Below are positions 1,491-37,317 of a DNA stretch of 64,000 bases, piece after piece. The DNA comes from Octopus bimaculoides (lineage: Eukaryota). The notes under the pieces are model-generated. The model searched no databases, was not told the DNA's origin, and saw only the letters and a program-made list of their open reading frames with translations. The DNA is taken from contig NC_068984.1 of the NCBI RefSeq assembly GCF_001194135.2, positions 130,474,875-130,538,874 on the forward strand, given 5' to 3'. Each line of letters starts with the position of its first letter. The first letter of the stretch is position 1. A program made the position numbers and the translations under genes.

Positions 1491-1616
1491 CCACCACTCT
1501 TCCTCCTCTTCATGGAGGACGATAATAATTTCTCCACCTTTAAATGTCAGCTCGTCTTCATTATCAGCATCACAATCATATTTAGCTCGACAGCGTCTCT
1601 TACCATTAGATTTTTT
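1491..1616 (-). CDS. Asap: ASAP-family ArfGAP, SH3-domain exon (phase 0-0, 126 nt)
   Basis: ttccag|AAAAAATCT...TGGTGG|gtgagt; encodes KKSNGKRRCRAKYDCDADNEDELTFKGGEIIIVLHEEEEEWW, matching the ASAP SH3 pattern YDCxADNxDELTF...EWW. The terminal SH3 exon was not found in 1-1490 and is presumably outside the window. Confidence 0.95.
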
Positions 1617-2628
1617 CTGGAAGTAGACACACACAACAATAAACACCATTCTACCCAACAAAATTACACATATACAACAAATTACACATATACACTCTTA
1701 GCCATCTGGTTCGCCAGTCCCCAGTCAAATCATCTATACATGTATATACACACATTACATGTATATAAGTAGGGTAAAACCTATGCTATATCCTCTTGAA
1801 GCACATCTGCCTATTCCAGTATTACAATCCAGTATGTAGTTGTGATGGATGTAAGATATATATTAAAGTTGAAAATTATGGAAATATTGTTTGTAGAGTT
1901 ATTATATCACAAATCAGGAAGTTGGAAAAACATAATTCTTATTAGCAAATGAAACATGTGTAATGGTGAATAAATAATACCAAAATATTTTCCCAACTTG
2001 CTGTTTTGTTAGACAGTATATATATATATAAATATATACAAGGTCAGAAATATATTAATACATGTGCCTGGATTAATCTTCTGTTTATTCCCTTTACATT
2101 ATATACTTACATGCGTATTTACAAAGTTAGATGTATAACTGATACTATTAAGTTTAGAATTTCATGTAGATTTATCATCATCCAGTCTGCATCTTGTATA
2201 ATGGTTTGGTTACTAATATACTGAGTAGCGTTTCTGGTTATGATATACAGAGGAAATTAATTGCTGGTAGGGTCACCGTATTTCATTATGCAACTATAAT
2301 ATACTACCAGGTATATTAAAGGCTTCTATGTCAATACTGATTGAATCACGTGATCACGTGACTGACCAGGTTATCAGATGTTGTTATACATCACTGGTCA
2401 CAATGCACTTTTGCATTCTTTTAGCCTTCAAATGATGCCACCCCGCTGGCTAGGCGAGCAGGCCAACATCCCCATCTGATCTAACTGCAATTAGATGTTC
2501 TGAGGGTTTGAAACAGATGTCGGCTTTCATTTCCTTTCCTTTTTCATGTCAGAATGTCAAGAGAAAATAAATTGCAGGAGAGCTGTGTCAATCATCTCAT
2601 CTAAAAGAAATGGCACTGAGGAACATAC

Positions 2629-2747
2629 CTTAATTCGTGGAACAGGAACAGGTGGTGCTACAAAGTCTTTGCCCTGAGTCTCTTCAACTCTCCCCCCAGG
2701 ATCAATTCTGTCACGAGAACGACTTCGATCATTACGTAGGGTCAAAT
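2629..2747 (-). CDS. Asap: ASAP-family ArfGAP, pre-SH3 linker exon (phase 1-0, 119 nt)
   Basis: tttcag|AT TTG ACC...ATT AAG|gtatgt; (D)LTLRNDRSRSRDRIDPGGRVEETQGKDFVAPPVPVPRIK; phases fit both neighbouring exons. Confidence 0.9.
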
Positions 2748-3281
2748 CTGAAACAAGAAACAAACAATTTGCTTAAATCAATTTTAATGTTTCAGATGAG
2801 AATTAATCAATGAATATAATAAACAAATGAACAGCTAAGATTATTAAAAATACCTAAAAAAAAAATCACCCTGGGTCCTACATGTGATGTTGGACCTATA
2901 TTACATGCTTTAATGCACTAAAACCTCTTGTTCTTGAATATGGGTAGCTGAAAATGGGGGGCATCAAATATGCCTGTTTGTTTTTTATGCCTTCAAATAT
3001 GGTAGTTTAACAGACCAATAATGAGAAGACACTGAATATTAACATCTAGAGGAAATGTTGAACTGAGCATGTGTCCACTTCATGTTATTAAGAATTACGA
3101 ACAGTAAGTAAAATCCATGATGACGATGATGATGACAACATGCCTAGAAATATGTGCATGCAATTATAAATCTAAATGTTGATGCAAGAACTATGAAGAG
3201 TATTTTGAGCATTTCCTTTTGTTTGGTGGTAAATCATTTGATTGCGTTTATAGAAGTTGTGTCAGAAATGGTTTAACTTAC

Positions 3282-3343
3282 CAGCGCTATTCAAAGAGGA
3301 AGCTCTTGTACTGCGAGGATGCGGGAGAGGTGGAGGGAGGACA
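3282..3343 (-). CDS. Asap: ASAP-family ArfGAP, Pro-rich linker exon (phase 2-1, 62 nt)
   Basis: tctctgcag|T GTC CTC CCT...GCT G|gtaagt; VLPPPLPHPRSTRASSLNSA; supplies exactly the phase 2-to-1 change needed between the 28733 and 2747 exons. Not in the ORF track. Confidence 0.85.
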
Positions 3344-4202
3344 CTGCAGAGAGAAAAGACATTATTGTGACAGCAGTTTAGAGATATCAAACAAACAAGA
3401 TTTAGAACTGAATCTAGTATATAAAGCTATAATGTCTTAAATCCTGGCAGCCTGCATTTATTCAAGGAATAGCTGCTATTCTACTGAGCCTTGCCGAGTC
3501 ACATATTGTGTGTGTGTGTGTGCATGGAATAATTTTTGAAATGCACAACCATTGTATGAAGACCAGATAATCAATATTGCTATGTCTGAGACTGCTGAAG
3601 TGAGCTATCATTGTAAGGAGACTCAATGGTCCTATCTAGCTGTGGACATGGGCTGTAGGTTATATAACTTTAGGTCAGCAGATGGTAGATATGGAAAACT
3701 GAAAAAAACTTATCTGTTTACATAGTGTTATGTACAGTGTTATATATTGAGCCTTTGGGTAGCTGAAGTAATTTAGTTGTGACAAAAAACAAGTCAAGAA
3801 ATTAAAGAGTTTTCTTAATCAAAAATTCTACTCCAAGTTTGGTGGCACCTTAACTTCAGCATTTTGATGGATAATAATACTGTCATCAGTCTTGTCCTCA
3901 CAAATGGTTTCGAGAAAGTTACACTTTGAGTGAGCAACGTTTTAGATATATATCTCCCACTTTTGATCACAAGTATTTCATTTCAGTCTTCTATTTTCAA
4001 TAAAATGGAGGTTTAAGACTACTCAGAAATAAGTTCCAGAAACAATGGTAAAATTACATACAGAGTGATTTTAGACAGACACGATATGGAAGATGATTGC
4101 AATAATATTTTATAAGTACCAGCATCTTATAATCTGATATCAATATTAGTTTCTGTTTTTATACCTATTAAGCACCATATTTACATCCAAAATAAATAGT
4201 TG

Positions 4203-4360
4203 CAGGTATGGCTGTGTGGTAAGAAGTTCACTTTGCAGCCAAATGACTTCAGGTTCAGTCCCACTATGTGGCATCTTGGGCAAGTGTCTTCTACTATAGC
4301 CCCAAGCCAACCAATGCTTTGTAAGCAGAAATGGTAGACAGAAATTGTGTGGAAGTCCAT

Positions 4361-4393
<33 letters not shown>

Positions 4394-4620
4394 AGGGGTA
4401 TGTGCACACGTATGCATGTGTGTGTGTGTTGCTGTCTCCTTGCCTTGACTTCACTTGATAATTGTAAACAAAAGCCACTGCCATGCAAGTGGTGTCCTGC
4501 TACCAATCTTTGATGAAATCCTGTCTGGTCATAATGAAATATTACCTTACTTGGAAACAAGAGAAAGTTAGTGACAGGAAGAACATCCAGCCGTAGAAAG
4601 TTTGCCTCAACAAATTCCAT
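4203..4620 (+). mobile_element. tRNA-derived SINE, family 1, with internal (TG)n
   Basis: TGGCTGTGTGGTAAG ... GGTTCAGTCCC head, body shared with the copies at 38350, 42200, 47150 and 60592. Confidence 0.7.
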
Positions 4621-6539
4621 TCAACGACCCACGCAAATTTAGGAAAAGTGGATGCTAAAGCAATGATGAATACAAATTATTATCTATATTAAGTAAAAAT
4701 CCTTATTACACTCTGATATCATTACAGTTAAATGTATGAAATCATTTCTAACAGAGACACAAAGCCAGAAATTTGGAGAAAGGACAGTCAATTACATAAT
4801 CTCTGGCAATGGTATTTCATTTTATTGTCTCCTGAAAGGATAAAAGACAAAATTGACCTCAGTGAGATTTGATCTCATAACATAAAGAGTTAGAAAAACT
4901 ACTGCAAAGCATTTTGTCCAACACTAAAGATTTTTCCAATCCACTACCTGAAATCATAGTAATGTAAGACCATCTTTGTCACATAGAAGCTGAATCTTTT
5001 TGCACCTACAAAGTAATTTACAGCTAACTGAACGATTTTGTACATTTCCACTTGCATCAGATAATGAATTCAAACATAGATTTTAGAAGCCAAAATGCAT
5101 TTTGCATGATCCAGACACAAACACGTTATGAAAAAGAGAAAACTGATGACATCATTTTGTCTAAAAAAGAAAGCAGGATACTCCCATTCATATTTTGAAT
5201 TTCTGTGTCTTTTTTTTCACTTTTCATTTTGAACCCAAGAAAGACAAACATGCTATCAAAAAATTGGTCAATTCAATAAACAGACTCAATCCCTTATCAC
5301 GCTCTTCTTATTGCCTATTATTGTTGTTGTGGGGTTCCTTGATTATCCCTAGGGGTCATCCTTTATCAGGAGGACATCTCTATCATCCCCACTCCCTTTT
5401 TTTCTAACCTTTATATACTATGTATATTTCCCTTCATTTTCATTCTATAGTATGTATACTCACTCTTATTTATTTATTTTACCTTTTCATTATATGTAAA
5501 CCCCTACACTTTATGTCTGTCTTGTACTGTCCCTTCAACCTTTGCATTGATGGCAAATAAATGAAATCATCATTATTATTATGTAATCTTATGTTTATTG
5601 CTTGCTTTCACAGAACAGTAACATAGTTCACTGGGCCTTAAGTATGGGCTGTGGTTTGCTTTTGGTGTTGTTATTTTTACTGTATTAAGAGTGCACTGCA
5701 TAGGACAAGTGGAGTGTCTAGTAATGCTAGTTTGTCTATGTTATAAATACTTGTTAGTCCTGGGGTTTTGGTCACTTATTTGTCTCTATGCTTTTTGACT
5801 AAACCTAAAACACCTATTATCATAGAGATTGTTTCTGTCTTCAGGTTCCATGCAGTTACATAAGCTCTATTATTGTGTGTGTGAATATGCTTGCAAGCAC
5901 CTCTGTGAACAGGTGAGGGACAATAGCTTCAGACAGCCCACTTCTCTCTCTCCCTCTTTAAACATAGGCTTAGGAGCAGGGGATGCAGGGGTGCAAGTGC
6001 ACCCCCTAAATTATAATTTTTTTTTGGTAGGGGTTGATGAAAATGCTTAGATTATTCTCCCGAAAAATTGGGTTTGCATCCCACTAAGCAAATTTCATTC
6101 ACACACTTATGTCTTAAATATGTATATATATGTATGTATGTGTTTGGTATGTATGTATGTATGTATGTTTTGTATGTAAGTGTATGTGTGTCTGTCTATT
6201 TGTCCAACTGTATGTATATATGTACTTATGTGCACATGCATGTGCATATATATGCATTGAAAAGTAAATAAGCAACTGAGATTCAATGACATCCTCTAAA
6301 ACTATTTCCTGAAATTCTATCTTCTCTAAGATTCCAGTTCAGATTACACTAGACACATATTTATTTCAGTTATATACCCACCCATGTGTATATACTAAAG
6401 CCACAGCTGCCTGCACGAGAAGCATAATGATCAATCAAGCAAACAGTCAATACCACAACCACCACCACCACCACTGGTGATGTGATGTGTCTCTGAAAAC
6501 ACACATCTCACATTGAGATATGAAATACTGCTGAAATTG

Positions 6540-6770
6540 GCAGGAGCATTGCATGTTGAATTCAAATTTTGGCACAAGGCCAGCAATTTCAAGGAAGCGG
6601 GTAAATCAATTATGTCAACCCCAGTGCTCAACTGGGGCTTATTTTATTGACTCCGACAGGATGAAAGGCAAAGTTGACCTTGATGGCATTTGAACTCTGA
6701 GCATTGGATGAAATGTTACTAAGCATTTTTCCCAGTGTGCTAACAATTCTGCCACCTCACTGCCCCAAGA
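6540..6770 (-). mobile_element. tRNA-head SINE with Nin/Deu-like central domain
   Basis: Minus strand: GAGTTCAAAT (B-box) ... CTTTGCCTTTCATCCTGTCGGAGTCAATAAAATAAG, resembling from memory the Nin/Deu domain GCCTTTCATCCTTCCGAGGTCGATAAA. Confidence 0.6.
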
Positions 6771-6884
6771 GCTTTGTATATTAGCAATATGTGAAGTTAA
6801 CTTGAAAAGGTGAGCCTAAATTGTAGCAGGTTTATAATGTGAAGAATGAGAGACTTCAATAGTTTTAATTTCCCAACATATCTA

Positions 6885-7035
6885 CACTCTCTGAGTGGTT
6901 GGCATTAGGAAGGGCATCCAGCTGTAGAAACTCTGCCAAATCAGATTGGAGCCTGGTGTAGCCATCTGGTTTCACCAGTCCTCAGTCAAATCGTCCAACC
7001 CATGCTAGCATGGAAAGCGGACGTTAAACGACAAT
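6885..7035 (+). mobile_element. SINE/LINE 3' module with (GAT)n tail (family 2)
   Basis: GAGTGGTTGGCATTAGGAAGGGCATCCAGCTGTAGAAAC...GGACGTTAAACGA; near-identical copies at 23227, 52040 and 63080. Confidence 0.7.
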
Positions 7036-7376
7036 GATGATATACAGGTGCAGGTGTGACTTCCCAACCATATGGTTCTGAGTTCAGTTCCACTGCAAGG
7101 TACCTTGGGCAAGCATCTTCTATTATATATATAAATTATATATATAAATATCTTTTAAATTAATTTATGGTAACGGTAAAGGCATGCACATAAAGTTCCT
7201 ATTTTATTATGCTGGCTACCATCTAATGATACTGACTAGTGAGTCAGTTTTTTTGGGGTTACATCATAGTTATACCAATATAATGTAGGATAAATATAAT
7301 AATAACAATGATTCTTGCCAGCTCCTGTCGAATCATCTAAGGCATGTTAGCATGGAAGAAGGTCATTAAATGATGA

Positions 7377-7413
<37 letters not shown>

Positions 7414-7978
7414 GCACACTAGCTGTTTGTTAATGTAACCAGATAAACATTTACATGAAGATTGTTATAAAACAAGAAATACATAATACTGTAAAATTGT
7501 AAAAATACAAAAATAAAATGTGAAAACCAGGCTATATTCGAGTTTGATTCACTAACATATTTATCTATATGTATAGTTTGTTTATTAGTTTTTACAAATC
7601 CCAATTTTATATATATTATTCAGTACTAAAATNNNNNNNNNNNNNNNNNNNNNNNNNNNNNNNNNNNNNNNNNNNNNNNNNNNNNNNNNNNNNNNNNNNN
7701 NNNNNNNNNNNNNNNNNNNNNNNNNNNNNNNNNNNNNNNNNNNNNNNNNNNNNNNNNNNNNNNNNNNNNNNNNNNNNNNNNNNNNNNNNNNNNNNNNNNN
7801 NNNNNNNNNNNNNNNNNNNNNNNNNNNNNNNNNNNNNNNNNNNNNNNNNNNNNNNNNNNNNNNNNNNNNNNNNNNNNNNNNNNNNNNNNNNNNNNNNNNN
7901 NNNNNNNNNNNNNNNNNNNNNNNNNNNNNNNNNNNNNNNNNNNNNNNNNNNNNNNNNNNNNNNNNNNNNNNNNNNNNN

Positions 7979-8013
<35 letters not shown>

Positions 8014-10645
8014 AGAAGGGAGAGGGTGAAAAAATATTTGGATTTGTTAATGATGTTATATTGGTTTCATTGTTGAAGCTCCTTCATGTAAATGCAACAG
8101 AGTTCACACACACACACACAAAGAAGTTCATCATGCATTTTTAAAAAAATGATGTTATATAGCAGACTATCATTGCTACAGCAGTACTGTAGTAACACAT
8201 TCTGAACAGACATAATGTGTCCTTAGAGAGACAGAAACATCAGGACACATTGACAAATTTAAATCTTAGTACACATACACACACAAAGACTATATTCAAC
8301 GTGGAAAATTAAATTACTGCTATTGATGATGACAGTGATGACTATCAGAACTTAGAACTGGAACTAAATGATATGCCTGAGCTATAATATGAAAATAATA
8401 TTAGAGAAACATGAAAAGACATTGTGTAAACAAGTAGTATATGAAATTCTAATATAGATATATGGCCATAAATATTAGAGGAGAATCTGGTTGGCTAAAT
8501 TAACATAAATATTTGTTAGGCACTTCCTTTAACCACCTCAGAAAGATTAATGGTAAACTCAGCCAAGACAGGATTTGAATTTAATACACAAAGAGATGTA
8601 ACTAAAATATCGCTAAAACTATTTTGTGAGAGACTCAAGTGATTCTACCAACCCACCACCCATCTGAGTACAATGTTGAAAGACTATACCAACATGTTGG
8701 TTACTATGCAATGCCATTGTCAGTCTGTGTGAGTAAATGTGTATTAAAAAGCAGGCATAGCAAACACTTTGCAAAAATGTGGTTTCATGTTCTGTTCCAC
8801 TGTGCGACACCTTGGGTAGGTGTCTTCTACTTTAGCCCCAAACTGGCAAATGCCTTGTGAGTGAATTTGGTAGACAGAAACTGGAAGCCCATCGTAAAAA
8901 CGTGTATGTGTACTTAGGAAATTAGAACAATTACTATTTCAAATTCAACTCATCTCCTTATTTGGCATTTGATTAGATTTTTTTTTCATATCTTTTGTAC
9001 TGGCGGTTTTTTTTTATATACTCACCAGTCAGTGGGATATGCAATAACCTCAGCAAACTGAGGCAAGCATAGCTATATATCAAGTAAGTGGTATTGTGCA
9101 TGCGGGTAAGAGTACTAACACAGTAGAGATATTGTAGTCGCAAGGTTGTCATTATTAACTTACCATCGTAACCTCAAGCATCGTATTTCAAATATCACAC
9201 ACATTCACAACTGGATGTGTATGTGTACACACAAAATTGAAAGTTTATTTAATTCTATTGCAACACCCTCCCTTCATTTGGGAAACATCAAACGTTATAC
9301 GAACTCGCAACGTATCAACCTTTAAGTTCATCACATTTATTTTCCGAATGTCAAAAAACCACGTAAGTAAAATATATAAGAAGGGAAGTAACTGTTAAGT
9401 TGTCATCGGGAACATCAGATAGTTTTATTGCAGAGTAGCCTCCCTTGTACACAAAAAAAACTCGAGAGAAAAAGAATCATTGATTATTTTTGTATGTTTG
9501 CGTGCGTCTATGTGTAAGTGCTTGCGCGCGTATATTTTACGTGCATGTGCTGCAATTAGTAATACTTATCAACCAAAAGCATAGCGACTTGAAATCTGTG
9601 GTGCAAACAAATAAAAAAAAAAACCCCGAAAAATACGAAAGAAACAAGCGGTAAAAAAAATTGACTCCTGAGACGCGTCACCTGTGTAAAAGTAACAAGC
9701 TTCAGATGCATTTTAAATGATTTGTTCTTATAAAGTTCGATGCAGAAAAAACAAACAAACAAACAAACAAACAAAAAATAACAAAACAAAATTAAAACAA
9801 ACAAGATTGCATGCTGGGATACTTCAATGAGTGGAACACGTTATACTCAGATATGCCCGTGATGCTACAAAGCAGACGTTCAATATTAGTCCAAGAAGTG
9901 TAATGTCTTATTTGCCGTTCAACCTAAACGTGGTTGGTACTTTGACACATGCAGCAGTACTTAAGAAGAGTACAGCGGTGTATGCTTAGAGTGCACAAAT
10001 GACATATACTTGTACTCACTGGAGTGACCAAAACGGTTTTGTACCTTGGTATATACTCAACTCGAAAGATATTGCATTGAAGTACACGCTGTAGTGCACA
10101 CGTGGTGCAACATGCATGCGTATTTTTTAAGAAACACTGCAGCACACGCCAATATTTGAAGAAGAATGCAATCTTTACATGCAAGCAAATGCAACAAAAT
10201 TGTGTGTGCATGCATATGTGAGCACATACACTTCTGTGTGTGTTTGTATATAAGGAATATTACATAGTACTATACACACACACACACATATACATATTAT
10301 CCGTAAACAAGATTATTATTGTAGCTGGCCAAAACTTCAAAGTTACTGTCAATATTCTTGTTTAATAATAATAATAATAAATTTGTACTCTACAAAAGAC
10401 TAGAGTAACCCATCAGATGTATGTGTGTACATATATATACTGTAAATAGAAATTGCAAAAACAGTGTATATACTAGGCACAGTAGTAGCGAGATAGAGTG
10501 TATACAAGGAGTATTGTACATACAGTGGTGTTGTAGTGTATACATTGTGAAAATAGCAGAGATATGACACTGTAACTATGTTTGTGTATGTATACACACA
10601 TACACTCACACACAAATATATAAATATATACACACACACACACAT

Positions 10646-13885: not shown

Positions 13886-13906
13886 CTCCCGTATGAATAT
13901 CTTTGT
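13886..13906 (-). CDS. Asap: ASAP 21-nt microexon B (phase 2-2; x-QRYSYG-x)
   Basis: ttttctgccctcag|ACAAAGATATTCATACGGGAG|gtaagttt; long U-rich tract upstream; symmetric and stop-free in the required phase; paralogous to 22539-22559. Confidence 0.75.
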
Positions 13907-22122: not shown

Positions 22123-22530
22123 GTGGAAAGTAATGATAATGATGTAACGGTGGTGCTGTTGCTGATGCTGGTGATGGTGCTGCTTCTGATTGTGAACACA
22201 ATAGTGCAGTTGATTACGATGATGATGATGATGATGATGATAATGATGATGATAATGATAGTGGTGTTGAAAATGGTAACAATAATGATGATGATGATGA
22301 TGATAGAAGAATTAATAATGATGATAATGGTGGTGGTGATGATGATGATGATGATGGTAACGCTAGTGATAGTGGTAGCCATGCAGGTGTCAATGGCAGT
22401 AACTACTAATTAAGGTAATAGTGGAAATATTGGTTACAACGTTGACAGCGATGATGATGATGACGACGACAATGATGACGATGATGATGATGATGATAAT
22501 GGTGATGATGATGATGTTGATGATGATGAC
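22123..22530. repeat. Imperfect (GAT)n microsatellite tract
   Basis: About 400 bp of GAT/GGT/AAT triplets; source of the poly-Ile and poly-Met ORFs in the track. Confidence 0.9.
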
Positions 22531-22538: not shown

Positions 22539-22559
22539 CTTTCACATGAATACCGTTCT
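22539..22559 (-). CDS. Asap: ASAP 21-nt microexon A (phase 2-2; x-ERYSCE-x)
   Basis: ttttcttgccctcag|AGAACGGTATTCATGTGAAAG|gtaagttt; long poly-U tract upstream; symmetric and stop-free in the required phase. Confidence 0.75.
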
Positions 22560-26244: not shown

Positions 26245-28732
26245 NNNNNNNNNNNNNNNNNNNNNNNNNNNNNNNNNNNNNNNNNNNNNNNNNNNNNNNN
26301 NNNNNNNNNNNNNNNNNNNNNNNNNNNNNNNNNNNNNNNNNNNNNNNNNNNNNNNNNNNNNNNNNNNNNNNNNNNNNNNNNNNNNNNNNNNNNNNNNNNN
26401 NNNNNNNNNNNNNNNNNNNNNNNNNNNNNNNNNNNNNNNNNNNNNNNNNNNNNNNNNNNNNNNNNNNNNNNNNNNNNNNNNNNNNNNNNNNNNNNNNNNN
26501 NNNNNNNNNNNNNNNNNNNNNNNNNNNNNNNNNNNNNNNNNNNNNNNNNNNNNNNNNNNNNNNNNNNNNNNNNNNNNNNNNNNNNNNNNNNNNNNNNNNN
26601 NNNNNNNNNNNNNNNNNNNNNNNNNNNNNNNNNNNNNNNNNNNNNNNNNNNNNNNNNNNNNNNNNNNNNNNNNNNNNNNNNNNNNNNNNNNNNNNNNNNN
26701 NNNNNNNNNNNNNNNNNNNNNNNNNNNNNNNNNNNNNNNNNNNNNNNNNNNNNNNNNNNNNNNNNGAGTTTAAAGAACTAAAAATGGTTATATCTCCTCA
26801 TGGAACAGTGTCCCTCATTTGGTGAAGAAGAATTTCAAAAACTAACCATCTGCAAAATACTGGAAGTATCTTTAAAGAAAAAAAGGCATGAGTATAAAAA
26901 AAAAAAAAAAGAATCATGAAAATAAATGAAGATGGTAGAAAAATATTTCTGGAGAAGATTATGAGGAATGATGATGCCAAGCAGAAATGGCTAACAGACA
27001 AATAAAATGTGTTACAGTGCAGAGACAGGGAGACATGTTGTGCAAAGATAAAACAGTGGATATTCTGAGATATAAGATTATAAATAAACATGAAGGATAT
27101 TCTTTTAAAACAGCTCCATAATATATGGGGTATGGCATATAGTTTAACATTGATATGTGTTGAAGATTTTTGTTTTTCTAAACTGAAACATATTGTCAAT
27201 TCTACTGGATACGACATGTAATGTTATGGAGATAAAATACATATGTGAGATAATACATTCTACATTTAAACATGTTAAAATAATATGCTATAGAATGTGG
27301 GATACAACACAGCATGTGATATCTTCTATTATACAGCTCTACAACATGTGGGATATTCTGTTACACAACACTATACTACATGGAGTATTCTACTTAGACA
27401 CCGTTTACAATATATATATATATATATATATATAGAACATTCTAGGAAAACTACATGGGTTATTGTTATGCAATATCTTACATAGTATATGTATTGTTGT
27501 ACAACATCAAACATGTGGGATACTCTGTTAAAATACCATCAAAGCATATGAAACATTGTTATACAACATTAAACATGTAGGACAATCTTTATTACAGTAC
27601 TTACAATATAGGGATATATATATTGTTATACAATACTACAACATGTGCATGTAGGCCATTATTTCATATACAACACAATGAGATGAAATACTATTTTACA
27701 GGGTGAAAATAAATATGATTTGATACTTTGGAAGAAAGGAGTATAAAAGAGGGGGATATCAGAGAAAGCAGTGTTATACATAATGATAACTCACTCATAA
27801 TATTTGAACTTATAACCAGCAGCTTAACTATTCATATATATATTATACATTTGGATGTATAAATGGGAGAAATTACTCAATGCATGTAGTAGAGTTTATC
27901 TATTCATTCACAACTGATGAATCAGAAACACGAATTCTTTATCAGTTTATTCATCATCTTGTCACCTAAACGATCAAATGCACAGTGAAAGAAACTTGGG
28001 GTTGTGACTGAGCGAATCATTAATTTGAATGAAAAGGATGGGTCTAAATCATCCTGGCAGTAGGCACTCCAGTGTGTATTTGACTAACAGGGTACTCGGA
28101 TCAATTTTACCTGTTAACTATTTAAAATGCTTGATGAAACGGTCTGGTTACATGATCATGGAATTGAGTAGAATAATGAGCAAATTACCATGCTATGGAA
28201 ATGTACTTTGCATAATTTGAACAACATCTCTATTTATGTTCTTTTATTATATATATATATATGCACCAGTTCCAATTAGGTTTATTGTAGCCTTCTGCTC
28301 AATATTTCGGTGAGTGTATGAGTGTGAAAGTTAGAAATTGCTACCTTCATCTGACCGAAGCTCATCCTGGATAGAATACAGTAGAACAACCAACTGCTGA
28401 CTGAAAGAGTCGACATGTCCCTGCACAGCCTTCATGGCTTTGAGTGAGGATATTTGAGAGTAGCTGTGGCCCATTCAAAACCAAGTTACTGCTGTACATA
28501 GTCCTTCTCCAGTAAAGACAGGGCTGGAACTTTTCACTATAAAAATGCAGTGGCATACTGTTTAGAGATTTGCACAGGTTTCAATGTCAACTAATTATGT
28601 CAGGTAATTTCATTTCAGAGATCAAAAAGAATCATTTTGCTGCTTGAAACAGAAAAGAAGACAAAGAAAGAAATAGAGAGAGAGAGAGAGGAGAAAAAAA
28701 GGAGGATGACACAAAAGAAAGGAAATTCTTAC

Positions 28733-28772
28733 CTCTCCGATTCTGCAGGCTTTTGTAATACCACCTTGGAAC
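28733..28772 (-). CDS. Asap: ASAP linker exon (phase 1-2, 40 nt)
   Basis: ttcttgtccctgacag|GT TCC AAG...GAG AG|gtaaga; (G)SKVVLQKPAESE(R/S); phases fit 37024 upstream and 3343 downstream. Confidence 0.8.
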
Positions 28773-30142: not shown

Positions 30143-30186
<44 letters not shown>

Positions 30187-30716
30187 TTAAGGCACAAGGC
30201 CTGAAATTTGGCATGAGAACACTGGTTGATTACATCAACCCCAGTGTTTCACTGGTACTTAATTTATTGATTCTGAAAGGATGAAAGGCAAAGTCAACCT
30301 CAGCGGAATTTGAACTCAGAACGTAGTGGCAGATGAAATACCACTAAGCATTTCGTCCAGCCTTAATAATAATCCTTTCTATTAAAGGCACAAGGCCTGA
30401 AATTTTTAGGGGTGGGGACGAGTCGGTTACATCCACCCCAGTGTTTCGCTGATGCTTAATTTATCGATCCGAAAAGGATGCAAAGCAAAGTTGACCTCAG
30501 CGGAATGATATTAATAATAATAATAATAATGCACAAGGTCAGCAATTTTGTGGGGAAGGGGTTGATTACACTGACCCCAGTACTCAACCTGTACTTATTT
30601 TATCAATCCCAAAAGGATGAAAGACTAAGTCAACTCCAGCAAATGTAAAGAGCTGGAAAAAATGTTGCTAGGTATTTTGTCTGATGCTCAAACAATTCTG
30701 CCAGCTCACTGCCTTA
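29921..30716 (-). mobile_element. Four head-to-tail Nin/Deu-like SINE copies separated by (TAA)n
   Basis: Repeated GCACAAGG...GAAAGG(A)TGAAAG..AAAGTCAAC module at about 29921, 30188, 30373 and 30531, separated by TAA runs. Confidence 0.75.
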
Positions 30717-30879
30717 ATAATGATGATGATAGTAGTAATAGTAGTAGTAGTAGTAGTAGCAATAAGGATAAGAACAACATTAACAATAACAGAAGAAAGA
30801 CAAAGAACAGAGAAAAACTAAAAAGAAAGTCTTGGAGGTTAGGCTGAAGGAAAGAGGTGTTTAGTAATTTGAAACAGAG

Positions 30880-30936
<57 letters not shown>

Positions 30937-32065
30937 GTAGTAAGTGATGAGTGTCTTGGCTCAGTGGTTGAGCTATATTCCTGGAAATGTCAGTGAGTGT
31001 CTGTGAAGAAAAAAAAAAGCAAAAAAAAACAAACAAAGTCCAAGAAGAAAGCAGGGGGGGGGGTCCTGTAAAAATGAAAGCAGAAAGTGATATTGTTGAG
31101 TGATGCAGCATTGCATAAAAGTAAAAAAGCAAGATACACACAGCCGTAAGAGGTGCAACAGTACGTAAGGAAGCTGTACAGTTAGGAGAAGGATGCAGAT
31201 GCGTAATGAAGGCATGCAAAGGAAATGGATGCAGTTGCGTATGGAATAGACATGTGATATCCTGAGATTTGAAATACATTTGTAGTCATTAAGTGCAGAT
31301 AATATTTCTGTTATTTTATGGCTGCAAGTAAATTTGAGGATCTTATATCCAGAAATAACAGTTAAGGTTGCAACTATGAAGCAACAGTGATAGTAAAACT
31401 TCATGTGTGCTTGTATGTTGTTCCCTAGAATACAGTTAATACAAGGGAGATAATCATTTCTTCAGAATATTTGGTGGGATTAGAAGTTTGAATTTGGAAT
31501 AAGAAAATGCACAAATATTTATGTCTGTATGTATACATACTAATGTCTTACTAAACTTATGAAATTCACTCTTCCCAATGCCAACAAACAACCTATCAAA
31601 ATCAACAACATTCTCACCTCATAAGAAATTCTTTGAGCAACTCCACAAACAGAACCCAACAATCCAGATTAAGAATTAAAGAATCAACCAGCTCCTATTA
31701 CTGAATAAAACCCAATCCTTGGATATATATGTATGTATGATTTATACACACATACATATATATATAGTATTAATTTATACACACATACATGTATATAGTA
31801 TTAATAAAATACAGAAAACATATATGGTATTTTAAATTTTATATCAAATATCTTTTCTGATTAATAATTATTAGTGGCAGAAGCAGTAATAATACCAAAA
31901 GGTAATATTTATCCCCACTATGTATCATACTTAATGTATATACACTGTTGATAGGCCAGTTACTGTGTCATTTGTCCTGAGATAAGTACATTTATTAAAG
32001 CAGACCAGCCTTCACTTGTTTTGTCAGAAATGAAAAGATGCCCCAGCAGGGGCCAGCAAGAGTAC

Positions 32066-32107
32066 CAGATGCATTTTGGCTTTTGTGCAGAGCAGGAATA
32101 CCTTTAC
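32066..32107 (-). CDS. Asap: Candidate ASAP cassette exon (42 nt phase 1-1, or 6-nt variant 32102-32107)
   Basis: Acceptor cttaattttaagtttggctttcatag|GT AAA GGT ATT CCT GCT CTG CAC AAA AGC CAA AAT GCA TCT G|gtactc (KGIPALHKSQNAS); this donor is weak; alternative donor AAG|gtattc after 6 nt. Confidence 0.35.
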
Positions 32108-35100
32108 CTATGAAAGCCAAACTTAAAATTAAGTGATTAAATACTAGACAGTACAGGTGTAAAACTCTGTTATCTTTCTTTTATTTAACTCCTGTCATTT
32201 TTACTCTTAAGAAAGTCTGTCCAAAATGTTCGATACTCCACACACAATGACAATTTCACTATACATTTTCCGTTACTTAAATGCAGGTCATGTCAAAGCA
32301 GACCAATACTAATTGCCTTGGATTATGTTTTATCTGATATATTTCAGCTAATGTTGTAACTGATTTCTGACAAAACAAGTGAAAGCTGGTCTGTTTTAAT
32401 AGATGTACTTATACAGCTGCCAGTATAAGTACTAGTAGATTTTCAGGACCAAATTGCAACTCTTTCACACTTTTAGGCTCATCCAAGATATTGAAATCTG
32501 GAAATTTAGTCTTAATACCTTCAACATACCTAGCTACCAGGTTGTTATTAAGTCATGATTGATCAAGATTAAGGATTACATATCACCGTCCTCATTCCAG
32601 CACTTAACACATTATACTAACTTACTCCTCTAAGACTGAAATGTCTGGTATTCACTCTCTACTCCTGCTTTCCTTAAATGTCTGATAACATTGGCTCAAT
32701 TCTGACTTCACAATTCAGTGAATTATAGGAAATGTGTCAATCAGTGAAATCAATTAATTTAAGTAACATGCAAATTTCCAAATTTGCAGAAGCTATCTAA
32801 CTCATCCATGCTGGCATGGAATAAAAAAGAATGTGAAACAACAAAAAAGATATATTTTTCAAAATATACAAAAACCTTCAAAGATATATATTAACGAATG
32901 CTGTATTAACTATAATTGGAATGGAGAAAGAATATTCTGATTATAAGATTGGTGAGATTTAGATGAATATTTTAGGAGCAAAGTTCATAATGTGAAACCT
33001 TCATTAGCAAATTTCTTCATAAAAACAGGCAATATATAACAAGTAATACACGAGAAAGATATGAGTCATGTTCATGCAATATAGCAAGCAACAAGAAAGA
33101 TATGGGAAACATACAGGCAATATTGCAAGCAACATGCAGGCAATATAACAAGCAATAGAGCAAGTCACAAGTTAAATTAAATAGTGGAAAAAATATCAAG
33201 GCAGAAATTTGAATACAAAGTAAACATAGTACAAGGTTTTTCTATTCAATTAGTTTTGTCTCTATCTCTAGGTACAAAAGAGTTTAAAACAGAATATGTA
33301 CCTCCAGGTACACAAGAGTTTCACATTACATGACCTACCAGAATTACAATCTGTTTTATACTTCCTGGAACAGAAGAGTTACAATATTGTTTCTGTGAAT
33401 ACAAAAGTTGCTGTATAGTCTTATACTACATAATTATCAAGAGTTACACAGAATCTGTTTGTAACTCTTTGAAGACAATAGTTAATGGTAAGAAAAATGC
33501 TCAAGTTCTTTTCCTTGCTGTTGATACAGTGACCAAAGGATGTGATTTGATACAAAGACTTATTGTAATCAATACTATAGGCCACCAAGAACTGATGTTC
33601 AACAATTGAACTATGGTAAGAGTGTAAGAGAGTAAAATGCTAACTACAAGAGAAAAGGCAGACAAAAACTAAAAGAGGGTACAAATTTTAACACCAAAAG
33701 TGAAAAGGTGAACTGACAACTTAAATAATTTCCCTTCACCTGATTATTCGTGGCGATGTTGTTAGTGGTGGTGAGAATGGAGAAAGAATAACTCTCGCAC
33801 TATCTCTATTAAAGAATTTGATGCCCAAAACTTACATAAACAGTGAAGAACATTTAGTGAGTGAGAAATTGCTTAGCTAGTTCTGAAGAGAAATACAGTC
33901 TATGACAGAAAGAGAGTTTAATTCACTGGAAGCCATCTTACAAATGATGAAGACACCTTTGATTAATCCTCACTGCATAGGAACCAAGTATTCTCTTGGT
34001 TCTTATGCATGTGCACATAAAACATGGGAACTGAGTCAACTTATTTTTGAAAGTGGGGAACTTTCTGAAATTCTCCACATTTCATATGACAGAGTAAACA
34101 TTTTATTTTATAAATAATAAAAAGAAGTTTCAAGAACCAATTTGCATATATTACCACGTTACATCACCAGCAAAAAATTTAATCAGCACAGTGAGGATTA
34201 AGGAGGATTTCATTAAAACTCCATGGGAATTGCATATTTAAAGAAGCTTACAAAACTAAAGCTTTGACAAGGAGAAACTGTATATGATGAAAAGGTTGAC
34301 AACAAATATAATTTTGACAAAGGAAAATGATTAATTTTACTGAAAGACCAGCTACAAATACTGCAGATATTTATACAGCTTAAAAGGTTACCCAAGGAAA
34401 ATAATTTGGTGGGGGTTTTTGAGAAAATATTTAAAACTATCATCATAACTTCTTTAAAATGAAACCATATTTTAGAAGATACCTATATTAAAAACTATTG
34501 AAAATGATGATTGTAATATGATAAAAATAACAAGCCTGTTGTATGCAGTGCTCAGGTGTATTGTAATGTATTAGTTTTAAGTAGAATGTGAATGTGATTT
34601 ATATAATGATTGAACAATTTTCGTAACTGAATGTACTTCCACGTGCTAACCACATATTCATTGAATGTAAGTAGAATGATTTATCAGTAATATTGAAGTA
34701 AATGAATTTATGTACTTTGACTAGAGGCCTGACAAAAACCATGTGAAAAAAACAATCATGGCCTTTGCAGGCTCTCTCTGATTGTTGAGTCTGATGTAGT
34801 CGATGAAAGGAAGCAGGGAGGGAATTTCAAAGTGCTGCACTCTGAGAAGAAAGGGCCAGGTGAAGTGTGACTATAATAAAGTTTGAATACTTGATGAATG
34901 TAATCAATAGTCTAGCAGTGAAACCTCACAACCATGGCATCCCCTCCCTAAAAATAAATTAGAACAGTTACCGTTTAGTGTATTGTGGCTACAGCTAAAT
35001 AAAGACATGAAGTTATTTAAATCATATGTTACCTAATACTGAGTGGTATCAGTCCAGTTAATCACAGGTGTTAACTTACAGTAGCCAAGATAACGAAGGT

Positions 35101-35976
35101 TGTCATTTAGTGTCGAACTGTGGTATGTGGGAATAGTTTCTTGCATTATTAACCATGAACAGTTCCATAACTACAAAATTACAGGCCTAGCATATATAGA
35201 CAGGGCCTGAATCTTGAGATCAAAAATAAAATAACTTCTAGCACTTAGCATTTTTATGCTGGTGCCATGCAGCAAAGCACCCATGCTGGTTACATGTTGA
35301 AAAGCATCCGTGCTCATGTGATGTAAATATTTCAACAATTTTTTAAATATAATTCCTAATAATATTTAATTATATAAATATAATAGGATATAAACAATAC
35401 TGAACACACATACCCAAGATATGCATTTTGCCAGTATGTGGGCAGGCTGCGATTTATAGGCATAAGAGAATATATTCTCATCAATTCGCCTGGTGTTAAA
35501 ACACCTGGAAGTCATAGACAAGCGAGATAACTTGCATCAGGTCTTGTTACATGAGCAGCAGACATTATTATTTTGTCATTCTTATGACTTTTCAAGCGAG
35601 TTATTGTGCTTTTCTATGGCTTCCAGATGTTTTAACATCAGGCAAATTGATGAGAATATATTCTTTTATGCCTATAAACCATAGCCTAGCCATGAAATGG
35701 CAAAACACATACCTTGCATGTGTGTGTTTGATATTGTTTATATCCTTCAGGCTGCTTCTCATTCATATTTGAATCATAGGGTATGTCAAAACATCAAATA
35801 GCTATGAAGATCAATCTGACTGAAACAGAAATCAAAAGGGGGGTCTATAGGTAAAAAGGGGTTGAGAACCATCCCTATAGAGTAGCTCAATGGTTATGTT
35901 ACTGTTAGATACACTATCCTGGGGTTCAGTTCTGAAATATATTGTTACAGCTATAGTATTTGTCTTTATATCTTAC

Positions 35977-36015
35977 CTGTGTTCGGACCTTTCTTATACA
36001 ATGTAATCCTATCTG
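35977..36015 (-). CDS. Asap: Candidate ASAP cassette exon (39 nt, or 36 nt via NAGNAG; phase 1-1)
   Basis: catgtttatag|CAG|ATAGGATTACATTGTATAAGAAAGGTCCGAACACAG|gtaaga; (A)DRITLYKKGPNT, open and symmetric in the required phase. Confidence 0.6.
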
Positions 36016-36583
36016 CTATAAACATGATAAACCAAATCAATATAGTAGTAGTAGTAGTCGTAGTTACAATAACCCACCAAGTGAAACAAACAAAACGATT
36101 TTAGTAGTAGCTTTATTAATGATAGCGTTGTTGATATAAAATAAAGAGAAATTATTTGCATTCATGCTGTATAAAACTGAAGAGAGAGTATTTCAAGATA
36201 GAAGTTGATGTACCGGTAATTGTAGAGGAAGCAGAAGAAGTAATACTATGTTCATAATAAACATGAACCATACATTCATCTATCTATCTATCTATCTATC
36301 TAGCTATATCTATATATATTTAATATATGAATATAAATATATAGATATATATAGATACACATCTGTACACACACACGCACACACATACTCTTTAGGTCTT
36401 GTTGGAGATCATCTCTCTCTCTTACAAGGAACAGATTGACACTGACTTTGAAGTCACTGTCAACCCTTTCCTAAATTTGAAAATCCACTTCAAATGTATT
36501 GTGTAATCATTTAATTAATGTTTGACATTCTTGATATATAACTATCTAAAAAATGGTACACACACACACACATTTATACAACC

Positions 36584-36640
<57 letters not shown>

Positions 36641-37023
36641 CATACATACACTCATATATGTATAATTATATACATTCATACACTGTATATATTCTGCAAG
36701 AGTGCTGGACGTAGTCAGATGGTTACCGGGGTTAGGGCTTTTCTATGAATAAGGCACACATTACGAACAATGCAGCAGATGTAAAGCCAATCTTGGTAGA
36801 GTGATGGAATGTGAACGAGAGAATGAAGACGACGACGAAGAAATGTTGAAGAACACCAGCAAGAAGAGATGAAGAGGAAGGAGAAAAAAACAAAGGAAAG
36901 AAGGAAGAATGTTTTTAAACAAAAATGAAAAAAAAACAATCAACACAAACAAAAAAAAAACTTCACAAAAACAAAATGCAGGTAGCCAGAGCAATGGTTG
37001 TCTAGACGGACTGCAATCCTTAC

Positions 37024-37317
37024 CTACAGGAACATGCATGGTATTGCGATTCTCAGGACTGGGTGGTTTGAACCGTGGAGGTGGCGGGTCTGAAGGCGTA
37101 CGATAGTGACCCAAGAAAGAGGCATTGGGCTCGGACCAGTTCCTTGTATGGCCAGATGTTGGCGGTGGAACAGGGGCTGGTGGCTTCTTTTTGGGCGGCA
37201 GTGGAGGCAGACTTGGTCCGCCTGCACCGCTGTGATTATAGCTGTAGGAAGTGGTGTGCAGCAAGGTTCCGTTGGTCTGTGAAGGTGCCGCTCCACCGAT
37301 GCTATAGTGATTCAAAC
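37024..37317 (-). CDS. Asap: ASAP large Pro-rich exon (phase 1-1, 294 nt)
   Basis: catcag|GT TTG AAT...GTA G|gtaagg; LNHYSIGGAAPSQ...PSLPPLPPKKKPPAPVPPP...DPPPPRFKPPSPENRNTMHVPV. Confidence 0.9.

What the first reader, a model, noticed from the sequence alone, without database searches (positions are those of the whole stretch)
1491..37317. Combinatorial small-exon linker between the Pro-rich core and SH3 of Asap
Seen: about 36 kb carries only about 0.7 kb of coding sequence, split into small exons whose phases define optional slots. Phase 1-1 slots lie at 35977 (39/36 nt) and 32066 (42 or 6 nt); phase 2-2 slots lie at 22539 and 13886 (21 nt each). Each can be included or skipped without a frameshift. 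Inference: a tunable spacer that changes the length and phospho-content of the linker ahead of two PxPxPR motifs and the SH3 domain, plausibly neural.
Basis: partly seen in the sequence, partly recalled or inferred. Interest (0 to 1): 0.7.

Follow-up and report, generated by a model that had tools for sequence, protein, structure and literature searches.

The report
Alternative microexons in cephalopod ASAP linker
The region is the 3' part of a cephalopod ASAP (ArfGAP-ankyrin-SH3) gene; one of its two duplicated 21-base microexons is optionally spliced in a related species, but the two other proposed optional exons are unproven or probably chance.

Summary
The region holds, on the minus strand, the last exons of an ASAP-type ArfGAP gene: about 0.76 kb of coding sequence in 35.8 kb.

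All four proposed slots exist at the stated coordinates and phases, but their support differs.

- **21-nt exon at 13906-13886 (RQRYSYG):** genuine. cDNA contigs of a related cephalopod contain it (20/21 nt identical) in one sample and skip it in two others. A fourth sample carries a different 18-nt insert at the same junction.
- **21-nt exon at 22559-22539 (RERYSCE):** a paralogue with almost the same splice signals, including UGC at -9. Probably real, but no transcript shows it.
- **39/36-nt candidate (36015-35977):** the only decent candidate in its intron, but unverified.
- **42/6-nt candidate (32107-32066):** at chance level. It has a weak donor and lies between two 50-nt inverted-repeat arms.

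The chain is in frame only with a 40-nt exon (28772-28733) that the finding does not name. That exon is conserved in length and phase in a gastropod.

Both assembly gaps are intronic, and the related cDNAs show no obligatory exon between the 40-nt exon and the first PxPxPR exon.

Combinatorial use, neural specificity and phospho-regulation remain inferences. This is a new member of a known kind (regulated microexons in disordered linkers of scaffold proteins).

The parts
37024..37317 (-). Pro-rich core exon: 294 nt, phase 1 to 1. Encodes ...PPLPPKKKPPAPVPPPTSGHTRNWSEP...HVPV.
   Evidence: Read. Aligns with the Pro-rich cores of Tegillarca, Elysia and Lingula ASAP. A relative's contig L015 is 74% identical in nucleotides with the same donor position.
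35977..36015 (-). Candidate 39-nt cassette (36 nt from the CAG acceptor at 36012), phase 1-1, ADRITLYKKGPNT. Unverified.
   Evidence: Acceptor 0.9, donor 7.0. Only passable phase 1-1 candidate between the Pro-rich exon and the 40-nt exon. No homologue or transcript support.
32066..32107 (-). Candidate 42-nt (or 6-nt) cassette, phase 1-1, GKGIPALHKSQNAS. Probably not an exon.
   Evidence: Donor GTACTC scores -1.3. 4.2 equally good candidates expected by chance per phase. Absent from homologues. Lies between inverted-repeat arms.
31982..32412 (.). 431-bp segment bounded by 50-nt inverted repeats (arms 31982-32031 and 32363-32412, 94% complementary). It encloses the 42-nt candidate.
28733..28772 (-). 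40-nt exon, phase 1 to 2, GSKVVLQKPAESE. Needed for the reading frame and not named in the finding.
   Evidence: Acceptor 6.6, donor 6.0, best phase 1-to-2 candidate. Elysia orthologue is also 40 nt with the same phases. Present in the relative's cDNAs as GTKLVLPKPPDTE. Matches the protostome motif G[AS]K[LQ]VLPP.
22539..22559 (-). 21-nt microexon, upstream copy, phase 2-2. Adds RERYSCE; the first Arg is formed at the splice junction.
   Evidence: Acceptor 9.2, donor 7.7. Paralogue of 13906-13886 with conserved splice signals. UGC at -9 (22568-22566). No transcript evidence.
13886..13906 (-). 21-nt microexon, downstream copy, phase 2-2. Adds RQRYSYG.
   Evidence: Acceptor 8.4, donor 7.6. 20/21 nt identical to the insert in the relative's cDNA L012. 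Skipped in L010 and L011. No synonymous change in 6 conserved codons, against 40 of 90 in neighbouring exons. UGC at -9 (13915-13913).
3282..3343 (-). 62-nt exon, phase 2 to 1, SVLPPPLPHPRSTRASSLNSA (first PxPxPR).
   Evidence: Peptide 100% identical in the relative's cDNA.
2629..2747 (-). 119-nt exon, phase 1 to 0, DLTLRNDRSRSRDRIDPGGRVEETQGKDFVAPPVPVPRIK (second PxPxPR).
   Evidence: A PxPxPR followed by a basic run before the SH3 domain is shared by brachiopod, insect-like and vertebrate-like ASAPs.
1491..1616 (-). First SH3 exon (126 nt, phase 0 to 0). The second SH3 exon lies beyond the window start.
   Evidence: Pfam SH3_1, E = 3e-9. tblastn hits to mollusc and brachiopod ASAPs.
26245..26765 (.). 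Assembly gap in the intron between the 40-nt exon and the upstream 21-nt microexon.
   Evidence: left flank is (GA)n.
7633..7978 (.). Assembly gap in the intron between the downstream 21-nt microexon and the first PxPxPR exon.
   Evidence: right flank is (TA)n.
49143..49187 (-). 45-nt exon upstream of the finding, phase 1-1, (K)SKLRSYLSRSKLKS. Its orthologue is spliced straight to the 40-nt exon in one cDNA contig of the relative.
   Evidence: (alignment score 32.5; null mean 11.4, maximum 26.5).

Best explanation
**What it is**
The region is the 3' third of a cephalopod ASAP gene (ArfGAP, ankyrin repeats, Pro-rich core, C-terminal SH3), read on the minus strand. The disordered linker is coded by very small exons separated by introns of 0.5 to 10.5 kb.

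**Obligatory backbone:** Pro-rich exon, then the 40-nt exon (GSKVVLQKPAESE), the 62-nt exon (first PxPxPR), the 119-nt exon (second PxPxPR), then SH3.

**Optional part:** two tandemly duplicated 21-nt microexons lie between the 40-nt and 62-nt exons.
- Each of these three upstream exons (the 40-nt exon and the two microexons) ends in AG, and each microexon starts with A. Inclusion therefore creates a junction Arg and inserts R-[E/Q]-R-Y-S-[C/Y]-[E/G].
- Skipping gives a junction Ser instead.
- The insert sits 5 residues before the PLPHPR motif, which fits the PX(P/A)XXR core read by CIN85-type SH3 domains.

**Shown**
- The exons, their phases and their strong splice signals.
- The duplication.
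- Optional use of the downstream copy in a related species.
- Nucleotide-level constraint on that copy.

**Inferred**
- The upstream copy is also used.
- Inclusion is driven by an SRRM/eMIC-type factor through the UGC 9 nt before each acceptor, and is therefore probably enriched in neurons.
- The inserted basic Ser/Tyr patch is a phosphorylation or charge switch that tunes partner binding at the adjacent PxPxPR motif.

**The phase 1-1 candidates**
- The 39/36-nt candidate may be a further optional exon.
- The 42/6-nt candidate is most likely a chance open frame.
For: **Gene identity**
- Pfam ArfGap E = 1.4e-18, Ank_2 E = 3e-9, SH3_1 E = 3e-9.
- Exon-by-exon hits to mollusc and brachiopod ASAPs.

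**Backbone and frame**
-.
- The 40-nt exon has the same length and phase in Elysia.
- The phase-2 boundary is also kept in Tegillarca.

**Transcript evidence from a related cephalopod**
- The contigs are Logan assemblies of four sequencing runs. They carry exon-exon junctions, so I read them as RNA.
- L010 and L011 join the 40-nt exon directly to the 62-nt exon.
- L012 carries ACAAAGATATTCATGCGGGAG between them.
- L013 carries GTACATGCAGAATGAAAG there.

**Conservation**
- The downstream microexon is 95% identical in nucleotides, against 69-84% for neighbouring exons.
- Synonymous changes: 0 of 6 conserved codons against 40 of 90, P about 0.03.

**Paralogy and signals**
-.
- UGC at -9 in both copies.
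- UGC near the 3' splice site together with a strong 5' splice site marks SRRM3/4-dependent microexons (bioRxiv 10.1101/2024.09.17.613571).
- CIN85 SH3 core motif PX(P/A)XXR, with ASAP1 a known partner (PMC2702278).

**Against the 42-nt candidate:**
Against: - No RNA from the window's own species was available; the searches found none.
- The upstream 21-nt copy has no transcript support. The relative's second insert is an unrelated 18-mer.
- Tissue of origin of the four runs is unknown, so neural enrichment is untested.
- Bivalve, gastropod and brachiopod orthologous introns hold no such microexons, so the module is lineage-restricted and its function cannot be transferred from model organisms.
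- UGC at that position occurs in 7 of 35 strong acceptors in the region, so it is weak evidence taken alone.
Confidence: 0.72

Rival explanations
1. One reading: four independent optional slots (39/36, 42/6, 21, 21 nt) are all used and combine freely into many linker lengths.
For: - All four are open and phase-symmetric.
- The 39-nt candidate has a strong donor and is the only candidate in its intron.
- A real expressed small exon of this gene (49187-49143) has a similarly weak acceptor score of 0.3.
Against: - The 42-nt candidate has donor -1.3, with 4.2 equal candidates expected by chance. It lies between inverted-repeat arms.
- The 6-nt variant has donor -0.9.
- No homologue or cDNA contig shows either phase 1-1 insert.
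- No contig carries two inserts.
Confidence: 0.07
2. Only the downstream 21-nt exon (13906-13886) is functional. The upstream copy (22559-22539) is an unused or decaying duplicate (pseudo-exon).
For: - Only the downstream copy has an orthologue in the relative's cDNAs.
- The two copies share only 14/21 exon bases.
- An (ATC)n microsatellite starts about 10 nt after the upstream copy's donor.
Against: - The upstream copy keeps the best acceptor and donor scores in its intron, the UGC at -9, an open frame and the R-x-R-Y-S core. That core includes a synonymous CGG/AGA difference at the Arg codon.
- Flanking introns have diverged beyond alignment while the splice signals stayed 86-91% identical, which argues for selection.
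Confidence: 0.2
3. The two 21-nt exons are mutually exclusive alternatives (one or the other, never both), as is common for tandemly duplicated exons.
For: - Same length, same phase, tandem order, recognisable similarity.
- Each cDNA contig of the relative carries at most one insert.
Against: - Including both stays in frame, so neither frame nor nonsense-mediated decay enforces exclusivity.
- Both exons have standard GT-AG sites and lie 8.6 kb apart, so steric hindrance or incompatible spliceosomes are unlikely.
- Skipping of both is seen in the relative.
- No competing RNA structures were looked for.
Confidence: 0.2
4. Inclusion of the microexon is splicing noise with no function.
For: Only one contig in one run shows the 21-nt insert. 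The assemblies give no abundance figures.
Against: - 20/21 nt conserved between species whose neighbouring exons are 69-84% identical, with no synonymous change.
- A Logan contig follows a well-covered path, which suggests the insert form is abundant in that sample.
- Strong, duplicated splice signals.
Confidence: 0.05

Closest known systems
SRRM3/4 (eMIC)-dependent neural microexons of bilaterians
   Same: - 21 nt long, frame-preserving, strong 5' splice site.
- UGC between the pyrimidine tract and the AG.
- Very high nucleotide conservation.
- Located in a disordered linker of a GTPase-regulating scaffold, next to an interaction motif.
- Vertebrate ASAP1 also carries a conserved neural microexon (asap1b in zebrafish, PMC12626424).
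   Different: - Neural specificity and dependence on an Srrm factor are untested here.
- The exon is not orthologous to any microexon found in the non-cephalopod ASAP genes examined. It would be a case of recurrent evolution in the same gene, as described in bioRxiv 10.64898/2026.09.05.749416.
- It is present as a tandem pair.
Tandem exon duplication with alternative use (mutually exclusive exon pairs)
   Same: Two adjacent exons of equal length and phase, with recognisable sequence similarity and conserved splice signals.
   Different: - The exons are only 21 nt long.
- Co-inclusion would be in frame.
- Complete skipping occurs in the relative, so they behave like cassettes rather than an obligatory either/or pair.
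Alternative Pro-rich segment of ASAP proteins (mammalian ASAP1a/ASAP1b, from my own knowledge; Lingula isoforms P0046/P0174; Elysia isoforms P0040/P0172)
   Same: Optional segments in the C-terminal disordered region.
- Lingula isoforms differ in the Pro-rich core.
- Elysia isoforms differ by 33 nt coding GQFQVRRLSNQ just after the 40-nt exon orthologue. This is also an Arg-Arg-x-Ser patch.
- One cDNA contig of the related cephalopod lacks the Pro-rich exon.
   Different: - The Elysia variant is an alternative 5' splice site, not a cassette, and is not alignable to the 21-nt exons.
- The mammalian variant is a 57-residue exon inside the Pro-rich core.
CIN85/CD2AP-type SH3 ligand motifs (PX(P/A)XXR) in ASAP1
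   Same: PLPHPR and PVPVPR fit the core motif. The second lies just before a basic run and the SH3 domain, as in other ASAPs.
   Different: Binding was not tested. The first motif (PLPHPR) is not evident in the non-cephalopod sequences aligned.

Membership tests
ASAP-type Arf GTPase-activating protein gene | ArfGAP zinc-finger domain followed by ankyrin repeats | tested here: met
   Pfam ArfGap E = 1.4e-18; Ank_2 E = 3e-9 on joined exons 63999-57374. 60-79% identity to mollusc ASAPs.
ASAP-type Arf GTPase-activating protein gene | Pro-rich region followed by a C-terminal SH3 domain | tested here: met
   Pro-rich exon aligns with Tegillarca, Elysia and Lingula ASAP. SH3_1 E = 3e-9 for the first SH3 exon. 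The complete SH3 is seen in the relative's cDNA, E = 1.1e-15.
ASAP-type Arf GTPase-activating protein gene | N-terminal BAR and PH domains | not testable with these tools
   These exons would lie beyond coordinate 64000; the window starts inside the ArfGAP domain.
Alternatively spliced cassette microexon | Exon of 3-27 nt, a multiple of three, bounded by AG and GT | tested here: met
   Both 21-nt exons, phase 2-2, CAG|...|GTAAGT.
Alternatively spliced cassette microexon | Both inclusion and skipping seen in transcripts | tested here: inconclusive
   Met for the orthologue of 13906-13886 in a related species (L012 against L010/L011). No RNA of the window's species was found. Nothing is available for 22559-22539, 36015-35977 or 32107-32066.
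SRRM3/4 (eMIC)-dependent neural microexon | UGC motif close upstream of the 3' splice site, plus a strong 5' splice site | tested here: met
   UGC at -9 in both copies. Donors GGTAAGT score 7.6-7.7. Background: 7 of 35 strong acceptors have TGC within -15..-3.
SRRM3/4 (eMIC)-dependent neural microexon | Neural-enriched inclusion that depends on the Srrm eMIC domain | not testable with these tools
   Tissue of runs SRR29271463/65/76/83 is unknown. No perturbation data.
Mutually exclusive tandem exons | Tandem homologous exons of equal length and phase | tested here: met
Mutually exclusive tandem exons | Exactly one of the pair in every mature transcript | tested here: not met
   The relative's cDNAs L010 and L011 contain neither insert. 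Co-inclusion would stay in frame.
Recursive splice site (for the AG|GTAAAG at 32107) | Strong 3' splice site directly followed by a consensus 5' splice site | tested here: inconclusive
   Acceptor only 2.7. GTAAAG lacks the +5 G. I did not count such sites genome-wide.
CIN85/CD2AP SH3 ligand | PX(P/A)XXR core | tested here: met
   PLPHPR (3343-3282) and PVPVPR (2747-2629). Motif definition from PMC2702278. Binding itself was not tested.

The most novel reading that the evidence does not exclude
A coleoid-specific pair of duplicated 21-nt microexons acts as a 0/1/2-copy dial. It places an Arg-x-Arg-Tyr-Ser phospho-patch directly in front of a CIN85-type PxPxPR motif of ASAP. This would give neurons a splice-controlled switch for coupling Arf inactivation to endocytic adaptors. 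It would have evolved independently of the vertebrate ASAP1 neural microexon, in the same gene. The junction Arg exists only when the exon is spliced in.
Probability: 0.2. Interest if true: 0.55.

Novelty: new member of a known kind. Interest (0 to 1): 0.4.

Why it matters
Neural microexons are known to reshape interaction surfaces of trafficking and GTPase-regulating proteins. A recent comparison reports that they arise again and again in the same ancestral genes.

A cephalopod ASAP microexon is conserved at 20/21 nt across species whose neighbouring exons are only 69-84% identical. Vertebrate ASAP1 has its own neural microexon. Together they would be a clean example of that recurrence in an independently evolved large nervous system.

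For annotation, the result has two practical consequences:
- Gene models of this locus need the 40-nt and 21-nt exons, which ordinary gene finders tend to miss.
- Reading-frame logic alone over-calls optional exons, as the 42/6-nt case shows.

Tried and rejected
- **Protein search with the Pro-rich exon:** no hits.
- **Protein search with the ArfGAP/ankyrin exons:** only genomic open-frame fragments and no cephalopod ASAP, so annotated isoforms of close relatives could not be consulted.
- **Representative search with a spliced query:** Repeated with one exon.
- **Exact look-up of the window's 184-residue open frame:** nothing found, so the species stays unidentified.
- **L001-L006:** only a distant relative's ArfGAP exon, 76% identical.
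- **L014:** a distant mollusc with a different exon structure; not informative.
- **Is the relative's 45-nt exon in L012 the orthologue of the 39-nt candidate?** Rejected. Alignment score is 14, at null level, against 32.5 for window 49362-49143.
- **Search for the relative's 18-nt insert in the window:** no match with up to 3 mismatches, nor with up to 7 mismatches when AG and GT flanks are required.
- **Microexon candidates in the orthologous introns of Tegillarca, Elysia and Lingula:** none.
- **YCAY (Nova-type) clusters after both 21-nt exons:** present, but explained by an (ATC)n microsatellite, so not used as evidence.
- **Resemblance of RQRYSYG to vertebrate ASAP1 KQRLSYGAF:** the vertebrate motif is seen in P0111. 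It lies upstream of the Pro-rich core, where the window has a different exon (49187-49143), so I treat it as resemblance only.
- **Recursive splice site at 32107:** weak signals, left open.
- **Rfam and tRNA scans of the window:** empty.
- **Run accessions:** not found in the literature.

Full report
**Gene and strand**

The window is AT-rich, rich in microsatellites, and has eight N runs. On the minus strand it carries exons of an ASAP-type ArfGAP:
- ArfGAP pieces at 63999-63883, 62468-62361 and 61317-61132.
- Ankyrin repeats at 57568-57374.
- Further exons at 55605-55543 and 51543-51378.
- The Pro-rich exon at 37317-37024.
- The first SH3 exon at 1616-1491.

The finding therefore covers the last third of the gene. 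The second SH3 exon lies beyond the window start.

**Checking the observation**

| Exon | Coordinates | Length | Phase | Peptide / note |
|---|---|---|---|---|
| Pro-rich | 37317-37024 | 294 nt | 1 to 1 | |
| 39-nt candidate | 36015-35977 | 39 or 36 nt | 1-1 | ttatagCAG tandem acceptor |
| 42-nt candidate | 32107-32066 | 42 nt | 1-1 | starts GTAAAG, then GTATTC (hence '6 nt') |
| upstream 21-nt | 22559-22539 | 21 nt | 2-2 | RERYSCE |
| downstream 21-nt | 13906-13886 | 21 nt | 2-2 | RQRYSYG |
| first PxPxPR | 3343-3282 | 62 nt | 2 to 1 | SVLPPPLPHPR... |
| second PxPxPR | 2747-2629 | 119 nt | 1 to 0 | ...APPVPVPRIK |
| first SH3 | 1616-1491 | 126 nt | 0 to 0 | |

The phase-1 slots cannot be joined to the phase-2 slots without a phase 1-to-2 exon, and the finding does not name one. 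A scan for such exons gave one outstanding candidate, 28772-28733: 40 nt, acceptor 6.6, donor 6.0, peptide GSKVVLQKPAESE. With it the coding total is 764 nt in 35,827 nt.

**Assembly gaps**

The gaps at 26245-26765 and 7633-7978 lie in the introns on either side of the 21-nt pair. They border (GA)n and (TA)n runs. Because they are intronic, their length does not affect the frame. cDNAs of a relative (below) join the 40-nt exon straight to the 62-nt exon, so no obligatory exon is hidden there. An optional microexon in a gap cannot be excluded.

**More than chance?**

I scored splice sites with a crude weight matrix whose frequencies I supplied from memory, so the numbers are only relative.
- **The two 21-nt exons** score 9.2/7.7 and 8.4/7.6. 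They are the only phase 2-2 candidates with acceptor at least 2 and donor at least 3 in the 25 kb between the 40-nt and 62-nt exons. Nothing at that level appeared in 60 first-order Markov simulations.
- **The 39-nt candidate** scores 0.9/7.0 and is the only passable phase 1-1 candidate in its 8.2-kb intron. Real-sequence controls give about 0.7 such candidates per 30 kb per phase. A demonstrably expressed small exon of this gene (49187-49143) has the same weak-acceptor, strong-donor profile, 0.3/8.7.
- **The 42-nt candidate** scores 2.7/-1.3. It is one of about 4 equally good chance candidates expected per phase. Its 6-nt version has donor -0.9. It also lies inside a 431-bp segment bounded by 50-nt inverted repeats that are 94% complementary.

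**The two 21-nt exons are paralogues**

The two copies share TTTnnTGCCCTCAG|A.AA.G.TATTCAT..G..AG|GTAAGTTT. The pattern occurs twice in the window, against 0 expected. Beyond about 45 nt the introns do not align. The splice signals are more alike (12/14 and 10/11) than the exons (14/21). In phase 2 the differences include a synonymous CGG/AGA change at the Arg codon; in phase 1 every change would alter the protein. This pattern indicates selection on both splice signals and on the R-Y-S core. Both copies have UGC at -9.

**Comparison with other animals**

The protein collections hold no annotated cephalopod ASAP. A full HMMER scan with one exon retrieved full-length ASAPs. The closest are from Tegillarca granosa, Elysia crispata, E. 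marginata and Lingula anatina.
- In the alignment the 39-nt, 42-nt and 21-nt peptides are all inserts relative to these proteins.
- GSKVVLQKP matches the protostome motif G[AS]K[LQ]VLPP. The last PxPxPR plus basic run is shared widely.
- In the Elysia locus the orthologue of the 40-nt exon is also exactly 40 nt with phase 1 to 2. The two annotated Elysia isoforms differ by a 33-nt alternative 5' splice-site extension just downstream, coding GQFQVRRLSNQ.
- In Tegillarca and Lingula the Pro-rich and 40-nt parts are one exon, and in Tegillarca the phase-2 boundary is kept.
- Their short orthologous introns contain no microexon candidates.

The 21-nt exons are therefore restricted to the cephalopod lineage, as far as these data reach.

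**Transcript evidence**

The last protein search, made with the spliced linker, hit a cluster of three proteins from Logan assemblies of four runs of one series. The contigs carry exon-exon junctions through to the stop codon, so I read them as RNA. They are identical in the shared coding part, apart from three A-to-G differences.

| Contig(s) | Run(s) | Junction after the 40-nt exon |
|---|---|---|
| L010, L011 | SRR29271476, SRR29271465 | ...GTKLVLPKPPDTE\|SVLPPPLPHPR... (no insert) |
| L012 | SRR29271483 | ...PPDTE\|RQRYSCG\|SVLPPP...; insert ACAAAGATATTCATGCGGGAG |
| L013 | SRR29271463 | ...PPDTE\|RYMQNE\|SVLPPP...; insert GTACATGCAGAATGAAAG |

- The 21-nt insert differs from window 13906-13886 at one base.
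- Between the two species the neighbouring exons are 69% (40-nt), 84% (62-nt), 75% (119-nt) and 72% (SH3) identical.
- 40 of 90 conserved codons in those exons carry a synonymous change. The microexon has 0 of 6 (P about 0.03).
- This confirms the 40-nt exon and the backbone. It shows that the phase 2-2 slot is really optional and that the favoured form differs between samples.
- The 18-nt insert has no counterpart in the readable window sequence. It may be lineage-specific, lie in a gap, or be a splice-site extension in that species.

**Upstream of the slot**

L012 begins with intron sequence and a 45-nt exon that align to window 49362-49143 (score 32.5; null mean 11.4, maximum 26.5). They do not align to the 39-nt candidate (score 14). 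In that contig the 45-nt exon is joined directly to the 40-nt exon, so the 294-nt Pro-rich exon is absent.

In the window, the exon ending at 51378 ends in phase 1. The 45-nt exon, the Pro-rich exon and the 39-nt candidate are all phase 1-1. No contig found covers the junction after the Pro-rich exon. The 980 nt of a relative's intron that are held (L015) show no counterpart of the 39-nt candidate. That candidate therefore remains open.

**How it most likely works**

- *Shown.* The 40-nt exon and both microexons end in AG, and both microexons start with A. Inclusion therefore makes a junction Arg (AGA) and adds R-[E/Q]-R-Y-S-[C/Y]-[E/G]. Skipping makes Ser (AGT). The insert lies 5 residues before PLPHPR.
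- *From the literature.* UGC close to the 3' splice site with a strong 5' splice site characterises SRRM3/4-dependent microexons. CIN85 SH3 domains read PX(P/A)XXR, and ASAP1 is a known partner.
- *Inferred.* Inclusion is set by an eMIC-type Srrm factor and is therefore probably neural. The basic Ser/Tyr patch is a phosphorylation or charge switch that tunes binding at the adjacent motif.
- *Not decided.* Whether the two copies are independent cassettes, mutually exclusive, or one of them unused. Strict mutual exclusivity is contradicted by the insert-free cDNAs, and nothing in frame or splice-site type would enforce it.

**Comparison with what is known, and novelty**

This belongs to the known class of regulated microexons in disordered linkers of trafficking scaffolds. 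Vertebrate ASAP1 has its own conserved neural microexon. Recurrent origin of neural exons in the same genes has been reported, with octopus among the species compared. The tandem duplication, the junction-made Arg and the position directly before a PxPxPR motif are particular to this case. I found no description of it in the literature searched, but public cephalopod annotations, which I could not consult, may already list such isoforms. I rate it a new member of a known kind, of moderate interest.

**Verdict**

| Claim | My probability |
|---|---|
| 13906-13886 is a real optional microexon in this species | about 0.9 |
| 22559-22539 is a real exon | about 0.7 |
| 36015-35977 is a real exon | about 0.35 |
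| 32107-32066 is a real exon | below 0.1 |
| the 6-nt variant is real | below 0.1 |

Noticed in passing
window 37024-37317 and 49143-49187 (minus strand); L012 1-216: The 294-nt Pro-rich exon is itself phase 1-1. It is missing from one cDNA contig of a related cephalopod, in which the orthologue of the 45-nt exon 49187-49143 is joined directly to the 40-nt exon. All exons from the one ending at 51378 down to the 40-nt exon are phase 1-1.
   Followed up: partly
window 31982-32031 and 32363-32412: A 50-nt inverted repeat pair, 94% complementary and 331 nt apart, brackets the 42-nt candidate exon. It could be a transposon remnant or could form a long double-stranded RNA stem in the pre-mRNA. No target-site duplication was evident.
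   Followed up: partly
L013 421-445 (relative's cDNA); no counterpart in window: An 18-nt insert GTACATGCAGAATGAAAG (RYMQNE) occupies the same junction in one run of the relative. It has no match in the readable window sequence. It may lie in a gap, be lineage-specific, or be an alternative 5' splice-site extension.
   Followed up: partly
L010 against L013, positions 1081, 1082, 1100 of L010: The only coding differences between cDNA contigs of the same species are three A-to-G changes (Arg to Gly, Thr to Ala) in the 119-nt exon orthologue. These could be A-to-I editing, which is common in coleoids, or polymorphisms.
   Followed up: no
window 22450-22529 and 22218-22356: Long (ATC)n microsatellites (transcript sense) begin about 10 nt after the donor of the upstream 21-nt exon, making that stretch very dense in YCAY. 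The downstream copy also has 8 YCAY in its first 100 intron bases.
   Followed up: partly
L007 43885-43932 (Elysia crispata ASAP locus): Two annotated isoforms differ by a 33-nt alternative 5' splice-site extension coding GQFQVRRLSNQ (an Arg-Arg-x-Ser patch), one exon after the 40-nt exon orthologue. This is a functionally similar but non-homologous optional segment.
   Followed up: yes
window 58334-59023 and 59953-60591: The exon for the first ankyrin repeat (GETALHLA...LHxVDF), expected between 61132 and 57568, was not found in readable sequence. It may lie in one of these two gaps.
   Followed up: no
L014 12714-15533: A 939-residue open frame with endonuclease and reverse-transcriptase domains (a LINE-type element) lies next to the ASAP SH3 exons of a distant mollusc contig.
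   Followed up: no
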